A DNA stretch of 60,157 nucleotides, the filler included, from Trichosphaerium sp. ATCC 40318 (taxonomy: Eukaryota; Protista; Tubulinea), in the NCBI GenBank assembly GCA_038496445.1. It is 3 parts of 3 records of this genome, joined end to end, with 100 filler letters (N's around TTAATTAATTAA, not from the genome) between each part and the next. Parts side by side here need not be neighbours in the genome. Positions count along the whole stretch, not along the records: positions 1 to 23,228 come from JALMLS010000227.1; 2 more parts are not named here. The stretch is one strand, 5' to 3'. Position 1 is the first letter of the stretch. Each line of letters starts with the position of its first letter. Positions 4,464 to 13,579 of the stretch are shown here, piece by piece. Below the pieces are notes generated by a model, which saw nothing but the letters and a program-made list of their open reading frames with translations, did not search any database and was not told the DNA's origin. Both the position numbers and the translations under genes were made by a program.

Positions 4464-4536
4464 AGATCCTGCTCGGAATCGAACCGAGATCACCAGATTC
4501 AAAGCCTGGTATGCTAACCACTTACAACACAGGATC
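4464..4536 (-). tRNA. tRNA-Gln(UUG)
   Basis: Acceptor stem GATCCTG/CAGGATC, anticodon arm CCAGG-CTTTGAA-TCTGG, T-loop TTCGATT; T-run downstream. Confidence 0.93.
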
Positions 4537-4547
4537 GTGAGGAAGAT

Positions 4548-4619
4548 AGGAGACTCCGGGAATCGAACCCGGAACTCGAGAGCCACATTCTCATATGTTA
4601 CCATTGACACCAAGTCTCC
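4548..4619 (-). tRNA. tRNA-His(GUG)
   Basis: Acceptor stem GGAGACT/AGTCTCC, anticodon arm TGAGA-ATGTGGC-TCTCG, T-arm CCGGG-TTCGATT-CCCGG; discriminator T, genomic -1 base A. Confidence 0.92.
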
Positions 4620-5255
4620 TTCTGTTTATTTGTTCATCAGGTTCGAATAGACCGGTCTTAAAGAAAAACTAGCACAACTGCCAAAAAAGTGAACACAAAG
4701 TACGAATTCGGATCCAGGCAGAATAAGAAAGATCTTATTAACATTTGTTAATGGTTGTACCAATTGTGCGCTTTGTGACGGAGCTGTAGCTCTAAATATT
4801 TTAGCCTATTTTGAGTCGCTTTGCCATGCATTTCTTCTGTTACTGTACTCAACAATATTAATTTACCAAACTACAAATAAAATATTACATTCTGTTTCTA
4901 GAGAAGTAATAGTTAACTACTATTAACGGTCTACAATGATGTATTTTTTTTATTATAATCGATACCTAAACACTATTGCTTTTAGTGCTGTTAACGACTT
5001 GACTTTAGTTGAAGTCAAGCCGAACCGAGTGAAGTCATTGCTTTTTTTGAAATGTCAAGAACATTTCCTGCGATAGTTGTAGAATACTTTACAGCCTGAT
5101 CATGGCGTACTTGTTCTCCGGAAATGTATTTATGTCCTAACCCGTTACTTTAGTGAAGATTACGTTAGTTGGTAAGTAAAAGTTCAAAGAAAACCAGAAG
5201 TGCTTCACATATTTTCAAATAAAATTGACATAAAAAATTACAACATAAACCATAA

Positions 5256-8200
5256 ATGTATGGTCTTGTTTCAAAATCGGGTGAAAAGAGCCATCTATTG
5301 AGCGTTGATGTTGATGGTATTTTTACAGGCACGTTTGTATCTTCAAAAACGCTAGTAGTTTACTGTATCATGTAGACACTGTTGGTACCATCGCTGTAAC
5401 GCAAGTTTATCAAAATAAGGGCTCTAACCCAATAGAATGTGTCTACTCCTTCCCTAAGCATGCGGCTATGCCAATAACTGGCTTTTCAGTAACAATTGGA
5501 GACAAGATAATAAAAGGTAACTTAATACAAACGTTTTTCTTTCTTTTCATAAAAAACTGTTAACTTTTTTTTGAACAGGAAATATTTCTTCTAAAGAGGA
5601 AGGAAAGATTGAGTATGATATTGCTGTTGCAAAAGGTAAAGGTGGTTACTTACTAGAACAAGTTTCAGAGGACATTGTTAAAATGTCAGTTGGTACGGAA
5701 CTGGTGACTAGTCTTAAGAAAGTTTTGGAAAAATAACTTTTACGAAAAAAAATAGGCAATCTCAATCCTGGAGAAAAAGCGTCTGTCAGAATATCTCTTT
5801 TGTGTACAGCATCTTATGAACTTGGTAACACAATGCGAATTGGGGTTCCATTAACTTTTGGTCCTCGATACGGAAAGCGTAAGTGACAAAATGATTGAAA
5901 TTGTGAGGAGCTCATAATTTATTATTTGTTACAGCTGCTGACAACATTGGAACTGTGACTTATACAGACTCTTTCCAGTATGATTACAACGCAAAATTTA
6001 AGGTCACTATGCCTTGTGGCATCAAAAATGTCACATCACCATCACACGATGTCAAGGGTACCCTAATCAAAAAGTAAAAAATAGTCATGGTTTTTTTTTA
6101 GCTGTATTTGACTCAAAAGATACTATTGGCAATATTTCACTAAGTCCGAGTGATGGTAACAACTGGGCAGATATTATCATCCTTGTAGAAATGAATGATT
6201 CAAATGAACCTACTATTATTTGCGAGACAACACCAGATAAACACAGAGCAGTATGTATATCGCAAATGAAGTTGTTGTTGACACACTCCATCCAGGTTTA
6301 TGTTTCTTGTAAACCCAACTTCAAGACACCTAAAGATCTTGGCTTGTCACATGAGTTCATATTCCTTCTTGATAGAAGTGGTAGCATGGCAGGACATCGG
6401 TATACTTTTAAATTTACATATTTAATGAACTGACTGAGGTTGTAGAATGAGGATGGCAAAAGAAGCACTTCAAATTTTTCTTAGAAGCTTGCCTACAGAT
6501 TGTTCTTTTAACATCGTTGGTTTTGGGACTTCCCATAACACGCTCTTTGAAGAAAGCAGAGAATATAATGATGAATCTCTTCAAGAAGCTTCTAATCACG
6601 TCAAGTCACTTAAAGCCAACTTTGGTACACAAGTCGCACTTGGATTTTTTTCTCAATTTTTTGTAACAGGCGGAACGGAGATACTTGCTCCTTTGAAGGC
6701 TATAATGACAAAACATCCTAAGACTGGTCATGAAAGAGTTATATTCCTTCTTACTGATGGAGAAGTACACAATACAAAGTCTGTTTGCGACTTTGTATTA
6801 CAGCACGTGGCGCACACTCGAGTTTTCACAAGCACGTTGCCTTTTAGTGAGAGAAGATCAACTTTAACAAAAGCAATAGTCGGTGTTGGGAAAAGTGCTT
6901 CTACTGCTCTTGTGGATGGTGTAGCCAAGTCAGGTAATGGAATGCCTACTTACGTAAGCAATACGAAGAATATGAGCACCAAGATAATTCGCCAGGTAAC
7001 TACAATACATAGAACGAAATGCGAAACCAAAATAGTAACTTGAAAACATAGCTCAAAAGCGCGTGCACGTGTTTAACGGCCGTGTGGAAAAACCTCAAAG
7101 TCAACAGCTACCCCAACGAAGATATATCAATACCATATAGTCCAGGGGATACTATATCTGTACTAGGATTAGTAGAAAGCGACGAAGACTTAGAGTACAA
7201 ATAACTTTATTAGATTTATTTAACTAGTGTTTAGGCATGCATCTTTGGAGCTTTGTACAACTTCACTCCCAGCCCAAACGTATGAAATAAGCCTCAAAAA
7301 TGCATTACATACAAATGGGATGCACGTACATCAACGGAGTGTTCATGTTATGTTGCCTTTCAGAGAAAAAAGCGAAATAGTTGATAACAGTTTGAAATAC
7401 CAGATACTAACAAAATACACTTGCTTTGTGGCAGTTGGTCAAGAGAAGAAAACTGTCAATGGTCAAACTACACATGTTGATATCCCTCTACCACTTCTAT
7501 CCGCCCGTCCACAACAAAGAGCATCTAACTCCGCAGGAGTGTCTGTTTCTCGTGGCGGTAATCGCTTCCATGAAAGCAGTGTGGTAAATAGGAAGTTAGT
7601 TACCTTTATTTACTAATCAATTATTTCTAGTGTACCATTGGCGCATCTTTCCATTATAGTACTGTTAAGCTTGGAGATGGGAAAACTATGAGATCTCAGT
7701 TTTGGGTAAGGATAGGGGTGGCAGCAACCACTAAGCACGGTTTTCTAAATTTTTTTGTACTAGGATACAGCAGGCCAGGAGCGATTTCACTCACTAGCTC
7801 CAATGTATTATCGAGGAACAACGCTTGCAGTAATATGTTACGATGTTACAGATGAGGATTCGTTTATCAGAGTAGATCATTGGCTATCTGAAGTAACACG
7901 TGGTTCAAATGAACCTGCTGTAATCCTTGTTGGAAATAAAGTACGTTTATTTGACGTGACAACAAACAATACGCTCAATGGATTAAAATGACAATATAGG
8001 TTGACTTGAAGGATGATCGTGAAGTCAGTTATACACGTGCTTTGAACTATGCCAATAAAAACGATATTTCCTTTTTTGAAGTTTCGGCAAAAACAATGGA
8101 AGGATTAGATCAACTAGTGTCAATCATGTACCAAGGTACTAACATCACAGTACTTTCGGCTTTACCCTTTATATCTATGTTTACTTATGTGTCCATGCAG

Positions 8201-9083
8201 AGGCATACCTTGCTATTGATTCAGCCAACAAGGATATCAAAAGTACGTCATTCTTTTTTTGGAATTGTGATGAGCGTTTTTTTTTCAGTTGTTTATTTTT
8301 TTTGTAGTTGTATTAGTTGGAGAGCAAGGTGTCGGTAAAACCACTATTGAGCAGCAAATCTCTAGTTATCGTGTCGATTTGACAGAATTTTGTAAGAAAA
8401 ATCCTAAGCGGAGTCAACCAACAAACAAGCAACAGCCAAGCACAGAAAACAATCAACAAGAAAATAGCGGGTTTTTTGGATATATTGCATCCGCTTTTGG
8501 CTCTTTTTTTGGAGCAAGTCAATCAGTAGGGCAACCAAAAACAGCCTCAGATCCAACAAAACAACTTAAAAGATCATATAAAAAACCAACACGTCAACAT
8601 ACACAACAATCTGCAAGTACAGATACAAAAAAAATAAAAAAGAAAGAAGTAATCAATGTGATGGACTTGATCATGTTACAAAAGGCAGATGGTACTTGGG
8701 ATTTAACAGATACATTTGCTAAATGTATGTTGACTACCAAAGAAGCATTATTCAAAGCAATACCGCCTGAGGTACAAATAACAATGACATTAGATTTTCT
8801 CCAATCTTTTTTCTCAATGTACTTTTTAGATGTCATCAAAAGAAAGGCTTTGGGCAACATTGCTTGCTATCACATACCTCGAATCTATTGAGACTGAAAA
8901 AGAAGCTAGACAGTTAGTTATATCAAAGGCAAAGGTTCATATATCATTATATAGTAATTGTAGTATGCACGCTAGAACCTTTCTGAACTTATGACAAGCA
9001 AAACACTAGCATTAAAATTTCCTGAAATAAACCTCAAATTACGTTTCCATTTACTTGAGTATCACCTTCTACCATTGCAGTAA
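5256..9083 (+). CDS. VIT-vWA (VWA5A-like) protein with an inserted circularly permuted Rab-type GTPase domain; many exons, exact 3' end uncertain
   Basis: VIT: QVYQNKGSNPIECVYSFP; vWA MIDAS: EFIFLLDRSGSM, GGTEILAPL, FLLTDGEV; Rab motifs [29 protein letters not shown], EVSAK, then GEQGVGKT; VWA5A-like C-terminus LIMLQKADGTW and LWATLLA; introns across the Rab region keep the frame. Confidence 0.85.
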
Positions 9084-9399: not shown

Positions 9400-10627
9400 T
9401 TACATCCATTTAAGTTCAGCTACCAGCAATTTATGATCTGTAACCTTCTCTGCATCTATTTGAGTACATGTACTATTATCCCAGTCAATTCTCTTTGCTA
9501 TATCTTGACTTATCCAAATGTAATCAATGCGTGTACTATATCTGCATGTTTTAGCATCAATATCCTTCTTTTCAGGATTAAGACATTTCCAGCAATCCAC
9601 AAACCCTCTTCCTTTCATAAACTGTGTAACATCTGTTCTTGGAGGCTCCCAACCTTAATTAAACATCAGAAAACAAAAACAAAAGACGAAAAAAGTAGTA
9701 CAGGTAAAAAAAAACTAAAAAAAATGTCACTATGGTTTTCTTTTTACCAGCGAAACTCTTATTAAATAATGACCACAACGCCATATACTCACCAGACATA
9801 TTTCTTCTATCTACAATAGTATCTTCCCAAAACCTTTAAACAAAGAAAGATAATTGTCAGTTCTCTCAAAGATACTTATTATTTAAACAGTTTCAAGCAC
9901 AAAAAATGACTCGAATGTTATTGGACAGAGTTGTCACGTGATTGTCACATGTCATCAAAAAAAAAAAGTCAGCGTACTCATCTGTGTAATCTTCTCTTGT
10001 CAGGGCATTAAAATCTCCAAGTATTATAGCTGGACCTTTGACCATATCCAAGATTTTTTTGATTTGAATCAATCGAACATTTTCGTCTTTGTGACATAAA
10101 TGTGTCACAACAATGTCTCCAATTTCATGTTTAATTATCGTAGCATTACGCGTTTCCTTCCCAGGGACCTTTTGCGAGGAGTATTAACAAAGATAAGACG
10201 AATTTCAGTTAAAAAACAAGGATACAGCCTCCTGGTTCTTGTAATAAACGTACCTCTAGTTTAATGCTTTCCCACGCACTCCCGCTATCTCCTTTGATTA
10301 TAAAAGCGTTTCCAAGCGTAGGAGAGTCTCCTGGTCCAAAATATGGCTTATAGGCTTGGCCCAACGCCGCAGCTATGCTCAGTCAATACAATATAGATGT
10401 AGTAGTAGTTACAGAAGCTTTCTGGCGTTGGCATGTAAGTTTGTCGCGGATTCTTTACAACCTACACTAAATAAGTTAATATATCTCTCAGTTAAATCAC
10501 TGACCTCTTGTAAACCTATAATGTCGATATTTAACGGTTTTAGCTTTGCGACAAGTCCTTTCTCATTAATCTTCCATTCATCATCGCTCCACGCGTGTAC
10601 GTTCCACGAGGCAATACTTAACGTCAT
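9400..10627 (-). CDS. Endonuclease/exonuclease/phosphatase (EEP) family protein, multi-exon
   Basis: Motifs ASWNV, DIIGLQE, VTHL, GDFNA, RIDYIW, TDH. Confidence 0.85.
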
Positions 10628-10842: not shown

Positions 10843-13240
10843 TCATGGATGATATACATTGATTATACGCACGATATCTTGTCTGCAAATAGGACAACTT
10901 TCACCTAAAAATAAAAAAATCAGAATAAAAAAACCCAAAACAAAAACAAAAAAGAAAAGCGCTCTTTGCTTACATCTAGCAGCACATTCTGTGCAACAAG
11001 CCATATGTCCACACTCCAAAAAAACAGTATCCCTCTCCAAGGATAAGCAAATAACACACCGCATATCCCTACGACGCTTTGAACGTGAGTGCTTCGAAGA
11101 AGATCCATTGTGTTCGTGATGATGACTATTTGATACAGGCGTTGTTGGTTGTTGTGTTAACACTGTAGCCTCTGGAGGAGTGCCATCAGGTGTTTGTGTA
11201 GTAGTTGACGCTGTTAGAGATACAATAGGTGTAGTAGCCGTCTGTGAATTAACTAATTCGCCAGAAGGAGAATTAGATCCAGAATTATGAATACTTGAAG
11301 CAAGAGGACTAGTTCCATTCGCATCAGGTGTTCCATAAGCAGCCGAATCAACTTCTCCTTCGCCACCAGCATCCTCACCATGTCCAGCAACAATATCACT
11401 ATTGTGTCCGTTATAGGAACTATCGTCTTCAGTAGAATAATCGTCCATATCTCTTGGTGTTTGATTTAATTCGAGAACCATATCATTAATGAATTTACTG
11501 CCGACTGGGTACTTTAACTTTGCCGTATGAGAGTTCGCAAATTGTAATAGGGACTCGTAGACTGTTGGTGGATTTTTTAATGTCATGCCTGTTGGTTCTA
11601 CGCTATATAGTAGGCAATGTTTTATTTGTTTATGTGTGTCAACAAATGTGACAGCAAAGGACCCAGGTTGCGTTTTAGAGAAACGTATAAGGAAAGTACC
11701 CTTTTAAAAGTATCAGTAAATAGTACATTCAAATATTAACAAGTTTCTGAATATATACAAAGAGCGCCAGAGAGGCAATTTTGAACGAAAACAAAAAACC
11801 CAAAAAAAATCAAAAAACTCAAAACGGTAATTTGAACGAGTTTTTTTCAGCTGAATAGCGCTCAACCGAGAAATGTGTGATATACAGTTTTTTCCTTAAG
11901 CTTTATACTATATACTAGGTATTTATTTATAACCACCAGAGTGTATCAAAGCGAGAAAAAAATAACATTTTCATTCTTTTCAGCAAAAAACGTTTCATAC
12001 CTCAACTTTTGTTTGTAGTAACAGATTGGCTTCAAGTGCAGGTACAAATCCAGCAAGTAATCTAGTGCGTTCTCAAGTAAGTACACCGTATCACAAACAA
12101 GATTCAAAAAAAGAAGGAAAAAAAAATATACAACGTACCCGCCTTGTAACGCCTTTACAAGCCGCTTTGATGACCCTAGAATTATTTTAAGCATTTTTAA
12201 AGCCATTTACAAATGAAAGTATGTCAAATCAACGCCTAAGTACCATCAAACGGGCCAAACCATTTCAAATATATACCAAACTCAAAGGCGCTTACATAGC
12301 CGTCTTTTGTAAAATCTAAAGGCATGGCGTCAAAAATAAGCAAAAAAATGAATACGACACAATCCCCTACCACGAAATAAAGCGCACCTAAGAAAAATTT
12401 GATTACTTTCTCGTATTTTGGGACGTCAGCGTCTTTATTCGGCTCTGCTTCAGTAAACTTTGCAAACCATTCATCCCAAGCTACGAATATCGCCTGTAAG
12501 ATTATATATTAGGCAAATAGAGTAAGTTTTAACAAAATAGTAACTGAATGATTGTTCTCATTGCTTCAAAAATAAACTAAAAGGCGTTTAAGCATTTTGA
12601 CGTGCAGTGAAGCGTTTTTTCTATTGTTTTAATGCAGATCTGTCCAATCGGTACAAAACGTACGTCCGCGTATGCCTTTGTCCAAAAATCTTTACCGTCA
12701 TCACATAGAATCAAATCTCTACCTTTTTTGGGTCCATTTGGTTTGTACAAAGCGACAAACTGGTCGGCTTGTTGCTTTAATACGAAGTCTTCTTGATAGA
12801 GTTGTATTTTAGTCTCTTTCCAGAAGTCTAATTCAAATTTCTGCTTCAGCGTGACCAGTATTGTTCGTATTCGAGTCATAGTGTCGACAATAATCTGTAC
12901 GGAGTGTTCGTGTGTGATGTGTTGGTAAGCCTTTTTACAGAAGGCTCCAATGGAGCTCTTGACAAAGTCTACTGTTGTTTTTAACTCTGCGAGTTCTGCG
13001 AATACATTAATAGGCTCATTGATGACCTGGAATCCTCGTGTATGCTCGATGATGTATAAAAGGTCCCCAGCGAGTTTTGTGCAGTGATGAACGAGCACCT
13101 GTTGTTTACCACCCACTCTATGTTTCTTTTTACCACGTTTCCGCGACAGAAACGACGGTAGGAACGGGCTCCGCCCACCACCGGGCCCTTCTGTCTTTTT
13201 GTCCTCCGTGGTGGATATACTGGGATGTTCTCCCTGTGAA
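10843..13240 (-). CDS. Cbl-like E3 ubiquitin ligase (helical region, EF-hand, SH2-like, RING); start exon not resolved
   Basis: EF-hand exon DFTKDGYVSAFEFGIYLKWFGPF resembles the Cbl TKB EF-hand; SH2-like GTFLIRFSKTQPGSFAVTF; C-terminal RING CVIC...CGHMACCTEC...CPICR. Confidence 0.75.
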
Positions 13241-13579
13241 AACAATTTCCGTGTTTGCTACAACCGTTAAAAAACGAGTAAAATGAACAAAAATCAGTCT
13301 TTTTTGGTAAAGAGCGATTGCTGAATGGTCTTTGATTTAATGCGCCGTTATGTGCACTTCACAACACAAGGTACTTCGATATAAGTACTATAAATGAAAG
13401 TTTTTCGGATTCTGATGCCCATAAACGGTGAATTAGCGTGTTCTTACTAGATTCAACAAAAATTGATTTTATCCATCAAAGTATTCATGCTAAAGCATTA
13501 TCGTGATATGGTTCAATGCATCACGCAAACAGAAAACACGTGAAGCTTCTTTGAGAAGATAAAAAAAAACATTTCTTTA

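What the first reader, a model, noticed from the sequence alone, without database searches (positions are those of the whole stretch)
7550..8375. Circularly permuted Rab5-type GTPase (G2-G3-G4-G5-G1) embedded in a VIT-vWA protein
Seen: removing five GT-AG introns (7584-7630, 7706-7763, 7941-7999, 8136-8200, 8243-8307) gives one frame: GGNRFHESSVCTIGASF...[21 protein letters not shown]...VILVGNKVD...FFEVSAKTMEGLDQLVSIMYQEAYLAIDSANKDIKIVLVGEQGVGKTTIEQQISSY. There is no P-loop upstream of switch I. The missing beta1/P-loop/alpha1 piece (GEQGVGKT, 8319-8342) follows helix alpha5 through a short linker and ends about where the N-terminal part begins (cf. Rab5 [34 protein letters not shown]). All five G motifs, including the G3 Gln, are intact and each occurs once. 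Known: cpRAS and YlqF/YawG-type permuted GTPases have the order G4-G5-G1-G2-G3, so this cut point differs. Inference: an independent permutation, possibly undescribed, that tethers switch I directly to the host protein and could work as a built-in nucleotide switch.
Basis: partly seen in the sequence, partly recalled or inferred. Interest (0 to 1): 0.92.

Follow-up and report, generated by a model that had tools for sequence, protein, structure and literature searches.

The report
Circularly permuted Rab-like domain, amoeba protein
An amoeba (Trichosphaerium) gene for a VIT-vWA scaffold protein carries, inside its linker, an expressed Rab5-like GTP-binding domain whose first segment (strand 1, P-loop, helix 1) has been moved to the end, a cut point that I found described for no natural GTPase.

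Summary
All five GT-AG introns exist. The spliced frame is 100% identical, across the whole G domain, to an independent transcriptome peptide (MMETSP0405, Trichosphaerium sp. ATCC 40318). The motif order G2-G3-G4-G5-G1 is therefore present in both genome and mRNA.

- **Profile matches:** Pfam Ras covers profile positions 22-159. The missing positions 1-17/21 match once, weakly on their own, directly after helix 5.
- **No other piece:** No other P-loop or Rab fragment occurs in the 23 kb window.
- **Structure:** AlphaFold2 predicts a complete six-strand, five-helix G domain, with the relocated segment confident as a strand plus a helix. This held even without alignment information for that segment.
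- **Family:** The domain belongs to the Rab5/21/22 group on a very long branch. It keeps 35 of 40 highly conserved Rab5 columns.
- **Host:** It lies in the variable linker of a VWA5A-like VIT-vWA protein, between conserved host modules.

The cut point here (helix 1 / switch I) still differs from both cpRAS and the YlqF/YawG family. No second organism and no prior description were found. GTP binding and any switch role are inferred, not shown. I rate it a new variant of a known kind, of moderately high interest.

The parts
5256..8991 (+). Whole gene (about 960-970 aa, at least 14 exons): VIT - vWA - middle region - permuted Rab-like domain - low-complexity tail - conserved C-terminal domain. 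The start codon at 5256 is probable only. Exons upstream of 6705 are placed by homology, not by transcript.
   Evidence: tblastn of VIT-vWA homologues is collinear from 5372 to 7490. Exons from 6705 onward are fixed by the transcript peptide P0001. The stop is at 8989-8991.
5315..5733 (+). VIT domain (two exon pieces)
   Evidence: Pfam PF08487 VIT, E 1.4e-09 and 1.1e-05
6344..6995 (+). vWA domain with MIDAS-type DRSGS motif. Interrupted by introns, including the GC-AG intron 6832-6879.
   Evidence: Pfam VWA_3, E 1.7e-19. 3182 homologues found. Intron boundaries.
7052..7553 (+). Host middle region (exons 7052-7194 and 7235-7583) up to the linker that leads into the G domain
   Evidence: P0001 mapping. 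P0008 residues 566-607 align to 7368-7490.
7554..7583 (+). New N-terminus of the G domain (GGNRFHESSV). It corresponds to the helix 1 / switch I junction of Rab5 and keeps the Phe at the position aligned with the conserved Phe/Tyr of Rab5 relatives. There is no intron between host and domain here.
   Evidence: Rab5 HMM positions 23 onward start at P0001 237. Alignment to Rab5 relatives.
7631..7705 (+). Exon with G2 / switch I Thr (CTIGASF), strand 2 and the start of strand 3
   Evidence: HMM positions 33-57.
7764..7940 (+). Exon with G3 (DTAGQE, catalytic Gln kept), switch II, strand 4, helix 3, strand 5 and the start of G4 (GNK)
   Evidence: Pfam Ras positions 54-113, E 8.7e-19. Best solved-structure match is Rab5A, E 2.5e-17.
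8000..8135 (+). Exon with the end of G4 (VD), helix 4, strand 6, G5 (SAK) and most of helix 5
   Evidence: Pfam Ras positions 114-154, E 1.9e-06
8201..8242 (+). 42-nt mini-exon: end of helix 5 plus a six- to seven-residue linker (DSANKD) to strand 1
   Evidence: Present in transcript peptide P0001 375-388. Linker block has pLDDT 79.
8308..8378 (+). Relocated strand 1 - P-loop (G1, GEQGVGKT, 8319-8342) - helix 1
   Evidence: Rab5 HMM positions 2-21. Roc profile 1-25, E 0.002. AlphaFold2 gives strand 161-167 and helix 174-182 at pLDDT about 94, or 84/78 without alignment rows for this part.
8379..8771 (+). Same exon continues without an intron into the host: low-complexity Q/S/K-rich tail and the start of the conserved C-terminal domain (QKADGTW motif)
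8830..8991 (+). Last exon: rest of the conserved C-terminal domain of the VIT-vWA family and the stop codon. There is no C-terminal Cys prenylation motif.
   Evidence: The C-terminal 95 aa match the extreme C-termini of 44 of the 150 nearest family members (45 matched stretches, one protein hit twice; best E 1.9e-10)

Best explanation
The window comes from the amoebozoan Trichosphaerium sp. ATCC 40318 or a near-identical strain. It holds an expressed, multi-exon gene for a VWA5A-like VIT-vWA protein. A G domain of the Rab5/21/22 group sits in the variable linker between the conserved VIT-vWA-middle part and the conserved C-terminal domain. This domain is circularly permuted. It begins at the helix 1 / switch I junction, runs through G2, G3, G4, G5 and helix 5, and a six- to seven-residue linker then leads into strand 1, the P-loop (G1) and helix 1. 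After that the chain returns to the host. Shown: the order in DNA and in mRNA, that each piece occurs once, intact G motifs, and a confident predicted canonical fold. Inferred: the domain folds as a normal six-strand, five-helix GTPase and binds and probably hydrolyses GTP. Both host connections leave from the point where helix 1 meets switch I. Nucleotide-dependent movement of switch I could therefore change the relative position of the VIT-vWA module and the C-terminal domain, or expose a Rab5-type effector surface. That would make the domain an internal, non-prenylated nucleotide switch. The likeliest origin is a tandem Rab duplication followed by loss of the first copy's strand 1 to helix 1 and of everything after helix 1 in the second copy.
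For: The splice pattern and order are identical in the genome and in an independent transcriptome peptide. The Ras profile is split into 22-159 followed by 1-17/21 with no overlap or gap. No other Rab or P-loop piece occurs in the window. The Pfam profile of RsgA, itself a permuted GTPase, aligns collinearly across G4-G5-G1 (P0001 302-411, 25.9 bits). AlphaFold2 gives pLDDT 85.6 and pTM 0.82 with six strands and five helices, and the G1 segment is a paired strand plus helix at pLDDT about 94. A control without any alignment rows over G1 gave the same topology (pLDDT 80.1, pTM 0.76). Foldseek returns Rab1/5/10/11 structures over about 135-140 collinear columns. 35 of 40 columns that are at least 90% conserved in Rab5 relatives are kept, and the other 5 are conservative changes, against 36 of 97 variable columns. 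The tree places it inside Rab5/21/22 with 90/91 support. Host modules on both sides are homologous to ordinary VIT-vWA proteins. Direct helix 5 to strand 1 joining is already known to occur naturally in cpRAS and YRG GTPases (PMC2430557). Natural tandem-Rab proteins, the presumed kind of precursor, exist.
Against: Only one organism shows it. None of the 149 other nearest VIT-vWA representatives has it. Neither did any of the 239 listed Rab-like hits that were fetched and checked for motif order or coverage, out of 829 and 7487 found, nor the viral or metagenome contigs. Conservation across species therefore cannot be shown. The branch is very long (2.02 changes per site), which could also mean relaxed constraint. 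The G1 piece is too short to be significant alone (E 0.12 for Ras). The structure is a prediction; coordinates could not be superposed non-sequentially, and AlphaFold2 may favour the known fold. No nucleotide binding, hydrolysis or partner data exist. There is no prenylation site, so it cannot act as a membrane-anchored Rab.
Confidence: 0.75

Rival explanations
1. Decaying relic. A tandem or inserted Rab copy was broken up, and the fragments are carried as a structural spacer or pseudo-GTPase with no nucleotide switching.
For: It is seen in a single lineage only. The branch is very long. The linker of this host family is variable and tolerant of insertions.
Against: All five G motifs, the catalytic Gln, the Phe aligned with the conserved switch I Phe/Tyr and the Phe/Trp/Tyr triad positions are intact. 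35 of 40 conserved Rab5 columns are kept despite about 55% overall divergence. The two pieces tile the profile exactly, with nothing missing or duplicated. The predicted fold is confident. The gene is expressed.
Confidence: 0.15
2. It is a member of the published cpRAS family, which is also associated with a vWA domain.
For: cpRAS proteins combine a permuted small GTPase with a vWA domain and occur in Amoebozoa (PMC2430557).
Against: cpRAS is G3-G4-G5-G1-G2 (cut between strands 2 and 3), with G2 after G1. Here G2 precedes G3 and only strand 1 to helix 1 is moved. cpRAS is of RAS type with a TIE switch I motif, whereas this domain is of Rab5 type (TIGASF). cpRAS lies N-terminal to a Sec23/24-trunk vWA with a zinc finger. 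Here the domain lies C-terminal to VIT plus VWA_3.
Confidence: 0.03
3. Artefact: an assembly error, a chimeric transcript or a wrong gene model creates an apparent permutation.
For: The genome is a draft of 710 scaffolds (PMC10521059). Transcriptome assemblers can produce chimeras.
Against: Two independent data sets agree residue for residue over the whole domain: the genomic window and the 2012 MMETSP transcriptome. All junctions are canonical GT-AG introns of 47-65 nt, shorter than the 75-bp genome mean. The G1 exon continues in frame into host sequence that is homologous to the C-terminus of the family.
Confidence: 0.03
4. The two parts do not complement within one chain. The C-terminal strand, P-loop and helix instead complete the G domain of a second molecule (domain-swapped dimer), or act as an unrelated P-loop.
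For: The helix 5 to strand 1 linker is short, at six to seven residues. Permuted and split domains are prone to swapping (general knowledge).
Against: AlphaFold2 closes the fold within one chain with linker pLDDT of about 79. cpRAS and YRG families show that a direct helix 5 to strand 1 connection is viable in nature.
Confidence: 0.04

Closest known systems
cpRAS (Elias and Novotny 2008, PMC2430557)
   Same: A eukaryotic small GTPase of the Ras superfamily, circularly permuted, with helix 5 joined directly to strand 1. It is embedded in a large protein that also has a vWA domain and is present in Amoebozoa.
   Different: The cut point is between strands 2 and 3 (G3-G4-G5-G1-G2), against the helix 1 / switch I junction here (G2-G3-G4-G5-G1). 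cpRAS is of RAS type, this domain of Rab5/21/22 type. cpRAS is N-terminal to a Sec23/24-trunk vWA, whereas this domain is an insertion C-terminal to VIT plus VWA_3. cpRAS occurs in many lineages, this one so far in a single lineage.
YRG / YlqF / YawG / RsgA circularly permuted GTPases
   Same: A natural permutation in which G4-G5 precede G1. The RsgA Pfam profile aligns collinearly over G4-G5-G1 of this protein (25.9 bits, below the cut-off of 30).
   Different: The order is G4-G5-G1-G2-G3 (cut after G3). This is an ancient TRAFAC ribosome-assembly family found in all domains of life and is not part of the Ras superfamily.
Canonical Rab5 / Rab21 / Rab22
   Same: Best sequence and structure matches. 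Rab5-like versions of the Rab family motifs are present: IGASF, [19 protein letters not shown], YDVT. All G motifs are intact.
   Different: The order is permuted, there is no hypervariable tail and no C-terminal Cys prenylation motif, the domain is internal to a protein of about 965 aa, and the branch is very long.
VWA5A-like VIT-vWA proteins (also PARP4 and ITIH-type VIT-vWA modules)
   Same: The host is collinear with this family from the VIT domain to the C-terminal domain.
   Different: None of the other 149 nearest family representatives carries a GTPase domain in the linker.
Tandem multi-Rab proteins (e.g. P0151 Solemya velum, P0153 Pecten maximus)
   Same: The stretch from switch I of one Rab domain to helix 1 of the next is collinear with this domain. 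This is the arrangement from which a duplication-and-truncation permutation would start.
   Different: Those proteins keep complete domains separated by linkers of 40-90 residues. Here only one domain's worth of sequence remains.

Membership tests
Ras-superfamily G domain | G1 (GxxxxGK[ST]), G2 Thr, G3 DxxG, G4 NKxD and G5 SAK all present | tested here: met
   GEQGVGKT, CTIGASF, DTAGQE, GNKVD and SAKT are each present once
Ras-superfamily G domain | Canonical order G1-G2-G3-G4-G5 | tested here: not met
   The order is G2-G3-G4-G5-G1. Pfam Ras positions 22-159 come first, then 1-17.
Rab family (Rab5/21/22 group) | Phylogenetic and similarity placement among endocytic Rabs | tested here: met
   The best solved-structure hits are Rab5A, 5C, 31 and 21. 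The tree puts it inside Rab5/21/22 with 90/91 support, but on a branch of 2.02 and unresolved within the group.
Rab family (Rab5/21/22 group) | Rab family motifs in the switch and interswitch regions | tested here: met
   IGASF, [14 protein letters not shown], YYRGT and YDVT align to the Rab5 consensus. The motif definitions come from my own knowledge of Pereira-Leal and Seabra 2000.
Rab family (Rab5/21/22 group) | C-terminal Cys prenylation motif and hypervariable tail | tested here: not met
   The domain is internal, and the protein ends ...ARTFLNL with no CC, CXC or CAAX motif
cpRAS | Order G3-G4-G5-G1-G2 (cut between strands 2 and 3) | tested here: not met
   G2 and strand 2 lie upstream of G3. 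Only strand 1 to helix 1 is moved. Definition from PMC2430557.
cpRAS | RAS-family affinity (TIE switch I motif) | tested here: not met
   Switch I is TIGASF, and the nearest relatives are Rab5/21/22
cpRAS | Architecture: cpRAS N-terminal to a Sec23/24-trunk vWA with a four-Cys zinc finger, or inside a COG2373/A2M-like protein | tested here: not met
   VIT plus VWA_3 lie upstream, and no Sec23/24 trunk hit was found
YRG / YlqF / RsgA cpGTPases | Order G4-G5-G1-G2-G3 and a Pfam family score above the cut-off | tested here: not met
   G2 and G3 precede G4. RsgA_GTPase scores 25.9 bits against a cut-off of 30.
VIT-vWA (VWA5A-like) host family | N-terminal VIT, vWA with MIDAS motif, conserved C-terminal domain | tested here: met
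   VIT E 1.4e-09, VWA_3 E 1.7e-19 and DRSGS motif. The C-terminal domain matches 44 family members.
Functional GTPase | Binds and hydrolyses GTP | not testable with these tools
   Only motif integrity and the predicted fold are available

The most novel reading that the evidence does not exclude
This is a third, independently evolved natural circular permutation of the P-loop GTPase fold, and the first in the Rab family. Its new termini sit exactly at the helix 1 / switch I junction, so both host connections leave from the nucleotide-sensing loop. GTP binding and hydrolysis would then mechanically reposition the VIT-vWA module relative to the C-terminal domain. That would be a natural 'inserted switch' design, comparable to engineered domain-insertion biosensors.
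Probability: 0.35. Interest if true: 0.8.

Novelty: new variant of a known kind. Interest (0 to 1): 0.68.

Why it matters
Only two natural permutations of the GTPase fold have been described. These are YRG (G4-G5-G1-G2-G3) and cpRAS (G3-G4-G5-G1-G2). An earlier survey had argued that just one was structurally possible, as cited in PMC2430557. A third cut point would widen the known tolerance of the fold, and this one separates the P-loop and helix 1 from switch I. It would also be a second counter-example to that argument. It gives a natural, expressed example of a Rab-type domain used as an internal module rather than a prenylated membrane switch. Finally, it offers a compact test case for how domain insertion plus permutation can couple a nucleotide switch to a scaffold protein. 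Its value is limited by the single-species occurrence and the lack of biochemical data.

Tried and rejected
- **G1 exon plus tail search:** The search for homologous proteins returned no hits. The length filter excludes the 495-aa transcript peptide.
- **Transcript DNA:** The look-up of encoding contigs for P0001 found nothing on record, so the transcript nucleotide sequence could not be compared and no dN/dS was possible.
- **First alignment for structure prediction:** I gave Rab N-terminal pieces as separate rows. MAFFT placed strand 1 on strand 5 (VILVGNK), so that alignment was discarded. I replaced it with collinear ranges cut from natural tandem-Rab proteins (A3) and a control with no such rows (A4).
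- **Motif-order script:** It flagged several proteins with an 'orphan' G1 after a Rab. HMM scanning showed these are ordinary tandem Rabs, so they were rejected as further permuted cases.
- **Viral contigs and metagenome contigs:** Only canonical, prenylated Rabs were found.
- **Literature:** Searches for this motif order, for permuted Rabs, and in the Trichosphaerium genome paper found nothing. The eLife paper that matched the search terms is unrelated.
- **Structure superposition:** A non-sequential superposition on Rab5 was not possible because model coordinates are not exposed.
- **Possible switch I remnant:** The residues after helix 1 (RVDLTEF) might be a remnant of a second copy's switch I start (compare GQFHEF). 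I judged this too short to count as evidence.
Full report
**What is in the sequence**

The window has about 36% G+C and short introns. Pfam on the separate exon pieces gave:
- VIT (5315-5733) and VWA_3 (6438-7040).
- Ras PF00071 positions 54-113 for exon 7764-7940 (E 8.7e-19).
- Ras positions 114-154 for exon 8000-8134 (E 1.9e-06).

The G3-G4 exon is most similar to Rab5A among solved structures (E 2.5e-17; then Rab5C, Rab31, Rab21).

**Origin and expression**

I searched the 1.84-billion-protein representative library with the vWA exon. It returned P0001, 495 aa and 99% identical. P0001 is peptide CAMPEP_0168518256 of the MMETSP0405 transcriptome, taxid 498012, Trichosphaerium sp. ATCC 40318 (Amoebozoa, Discosea).

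P0001 maps onto the window as nine consecutive exons:
- The match is 493 of 495 residues. The two differences, I160V and E179D, lie outside the G domain.

The exon order, including the helix 5 - linker - P-loop junction, is therefore present in mRNA from an independent data set. The published Trichosphaerium draft genome has 37.7% G+C, a mean intron of 75 bp and 8.7 introns per gene. That fits the window broadly, although the nine mapped introns here (40-65 nt) are shorter than that mean. That paper does not mention Rab, GTPase or von Willebrand (PMC10521059).

**Is it really a permutation, and is it more than chance?**

- Pfam on P0001 gives Ras at 238-375, matching profile positions 22-159 of 162 (E 1.9e-41).
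- The piece 388-404 matches Ras positions 1-17 (E 0.12 alone) and Roc positions 1-25 (E 0.002).
- A Rab5 HMM built from 107 canonical relatives gives hmm 23-159 on residues 237-373 (164 bits) and hmm 2-21 on residues 387-406 (9.4 bits). The two hits tile the profile with nothing lost or repeated.
- In a six-frame scan of the whole window (1203 segments), the four best hits are the four G-domain exons and everything else scores 3.8 bits or less. There is no other P-loop or Rab piece in the window, upstream or elsewhere.
- The Pfam profile of RsgA, a known permuted GTPase, aligns collinearly across G4-G5-G1 (302-411, 25.9 bits, below its cut-off of 30).

The G1 segment alone is too short to be significant. 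The argument rests on three things: it is the exact complement of what is missing, it lies directly after helix 5, and the fold prediction accepts it.

**Fold**

I ran AlphaFold2 on P0001 226-420. The alignment held 30 Rab5-like sequences trimmed to the G2-G5 part, plus nine collinear ranges cut from natural tandem-Rab proteins (A3). The result:
- pLDDT 85.6 and pTM 0.82.
- Six strands and five helices.
- The relocated segment is a DSSP strand (161-167) plus a helix (174-182), with pLDDT about 94.

A control alignment had no rows at all over the G1 segment (A4). It gave the same topology, with pLDDT 80.1, pTM 0.76 and 84/78 over the G1 blocks. Foldseek against the PDB returned Rab1, Rab5, Rab10 and Rab11 structures over about 135-140 collinear columns, with target TM-score about 0.70. 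That is what a permuted Rab should give with a sequential aligner. I could not do a non-sequential superposition because coordinates are not exposed.

**Family and constraint**

I re-ordered the domain, in a script only, and placed it in a tree with labelled Rabs. It falls inside the Rab5/21/22 clade with 90/91 support. It sits on a very long branch (2.02) and is unresolved within that clade. Among 40 alignment columns that are at least 90% conserved in 30 Rab5 relatives, it keeps 35, and the other five are conservative changes. Among 97 variable columns it matches the majority in 36. All G motifs, the G3 Gln and the Phe aligned with the conserved switch I Phe/Tyr are present. There is no prenylation motif: the domain is internal and the protein ends in ...ARTFLNL.

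**Host context**

The gene is collinear with VWA5A-like VIT-vWA proteins from about 5372 to 7490. Its last 95 residues match the extreme C-termini of 44 of the 150 nearest family members. The G domain is therefore an insertion into the family's variable linker. Neither host/domain junction coincides with an intron. One intron lies one residue before strand 1, and a 42-nt mini-exon encodes the end of helix 5 plus the linker.

**Distribution**

- Among the 150 nearest VIT-vWA representatives, only P0001 has the Rab part.
- Two searches of the 5.8-billion-protein set with the G-domain region found 829 and 7487 Rab-like proteins. Only the best 120 of each were listed and could be examined. No fragment or relative other than P0001 matched the full permuted region.
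- A motif-order script over the 269 proteins held at that point found 'G3 without upstream G1, plus G1 downstream' only in P0001.
- The flagged 'orphan G1' cases are ordinary tandem Rabs.
- Viral contigs and metagenome contigs yielded only canonical, prenylated Rabs.

These searches have limits, namely length windows, top-N lists and close relatives only. Absence elsewhere is therefore provisional.

**Comparison with what is known**

PMC2430557 defines cpRAS as follows:
- Order G3-G4-G5-G1-G2, cut between strands 2 and 3.
- RAS type, with a TIE switch I motif.
- N-terminal to a Sec23/24-trunk vWA domain, or inside an A2M-like protein.

The YRG family is G4-G5-G1-G2-G3. The conclusion that the present cut point (helix 1 / switch I) differs from both still holds. 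The domain fails three defining features of cpRAS and the defining order of YRG. I found no paper with this motif order or with a permuted Rab.

**Mechanism (inferred)**

The most likely reading is a folded, nucleotide-binding Rab-like module. Its two host connections both leave from the base of switch I. It could act as an internal switch or as a docking surface for Rab5-type regulators, without membrane anchoring of its own. The likeliest origin is duplication to a tandem pair followed by reciprocal truncation. Tandem Rabs exist in nature.

The main rival is a non-switching relic or spacer. The single-lineage occurrence and the long branch favour that view. The exact tiling, intact motifs and expression count against it.

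**Verdict**

It is a real, expressed, previously undescribed variant of a known kind (a circularly permuted GTPase domain). Function is untested, and it is known from one organism.

Noticed in passing
window 4464-4536 (-) and 4547-4620 (-): A tandem pair of tRNA genes, tRNA-Gln(TTG) and tRNA-His(GTG), lies 11 bp apart and about 640 bp upstream of the probable start of the VIT-vWA gene.
   Followed up: partly
window 6832-6879: A 48-nt GC-AG (non-GT) intron inside the vWA domain. It is required to reproduce the transcript peptide (FT|I|GVGKS). It is in frame and free of stops, so it reads through as coding in a naive ORF scan.
   Followed up: yes
window 10843-11586 (-): A 247-aa ORF with a C-terminal C3HC4 RING finger (PF13920, E 2.1e-11). 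The RING is interrupted by a hydrophobic F/L-rich stretch that looks like an unspliced in-frame intron.
   Followed up: partly
window 9400-10108 (-): Two short ORFs carry motifs reminiscent of endonuclease/exonuclease/phosphatase-fold enzymes (ILGDFNAL..., VTDHKLL...). Pfam gave no hit on the pieces, so this is unverified.
   Followed up: partly
window 12577-13245 (-): A 222-aa ORF with no Pfam match. It was not examined further.
   Followed up: no
P0151 (Solemya velum, 651 aa), P0152, P0153 (Pecten maximus), P0154, P0156: These are natural proteins made of two or three complete Rab domains in tandem, P0156 with an added F5/8 type C domain. They are the kind of arrangement from which a duplication-and-truncation permutation could arise.
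   Followed up: partly
P0001 302-411 (window about 7857-8375): The Pfam RsgA_GTPase profile, a circularly permuted family, aligns collinearly over G4-G5-G1 at 25.9 bits, below its cut-off. The same family is listed among the precomputed Pfam hits for this peptide in the public collection.
   Followed up: yes
window 8379-8400 (P0001 about 410-417): The residues just after the relocated helix 1 (RVDLTEF) loosely resemble the start of switch I in Rab5 (GQFHEF). They could be a remnant of a second Rab copy. AlphaFold2 makes a short helix here. The stretch is too short to test.
   Followed up: partly
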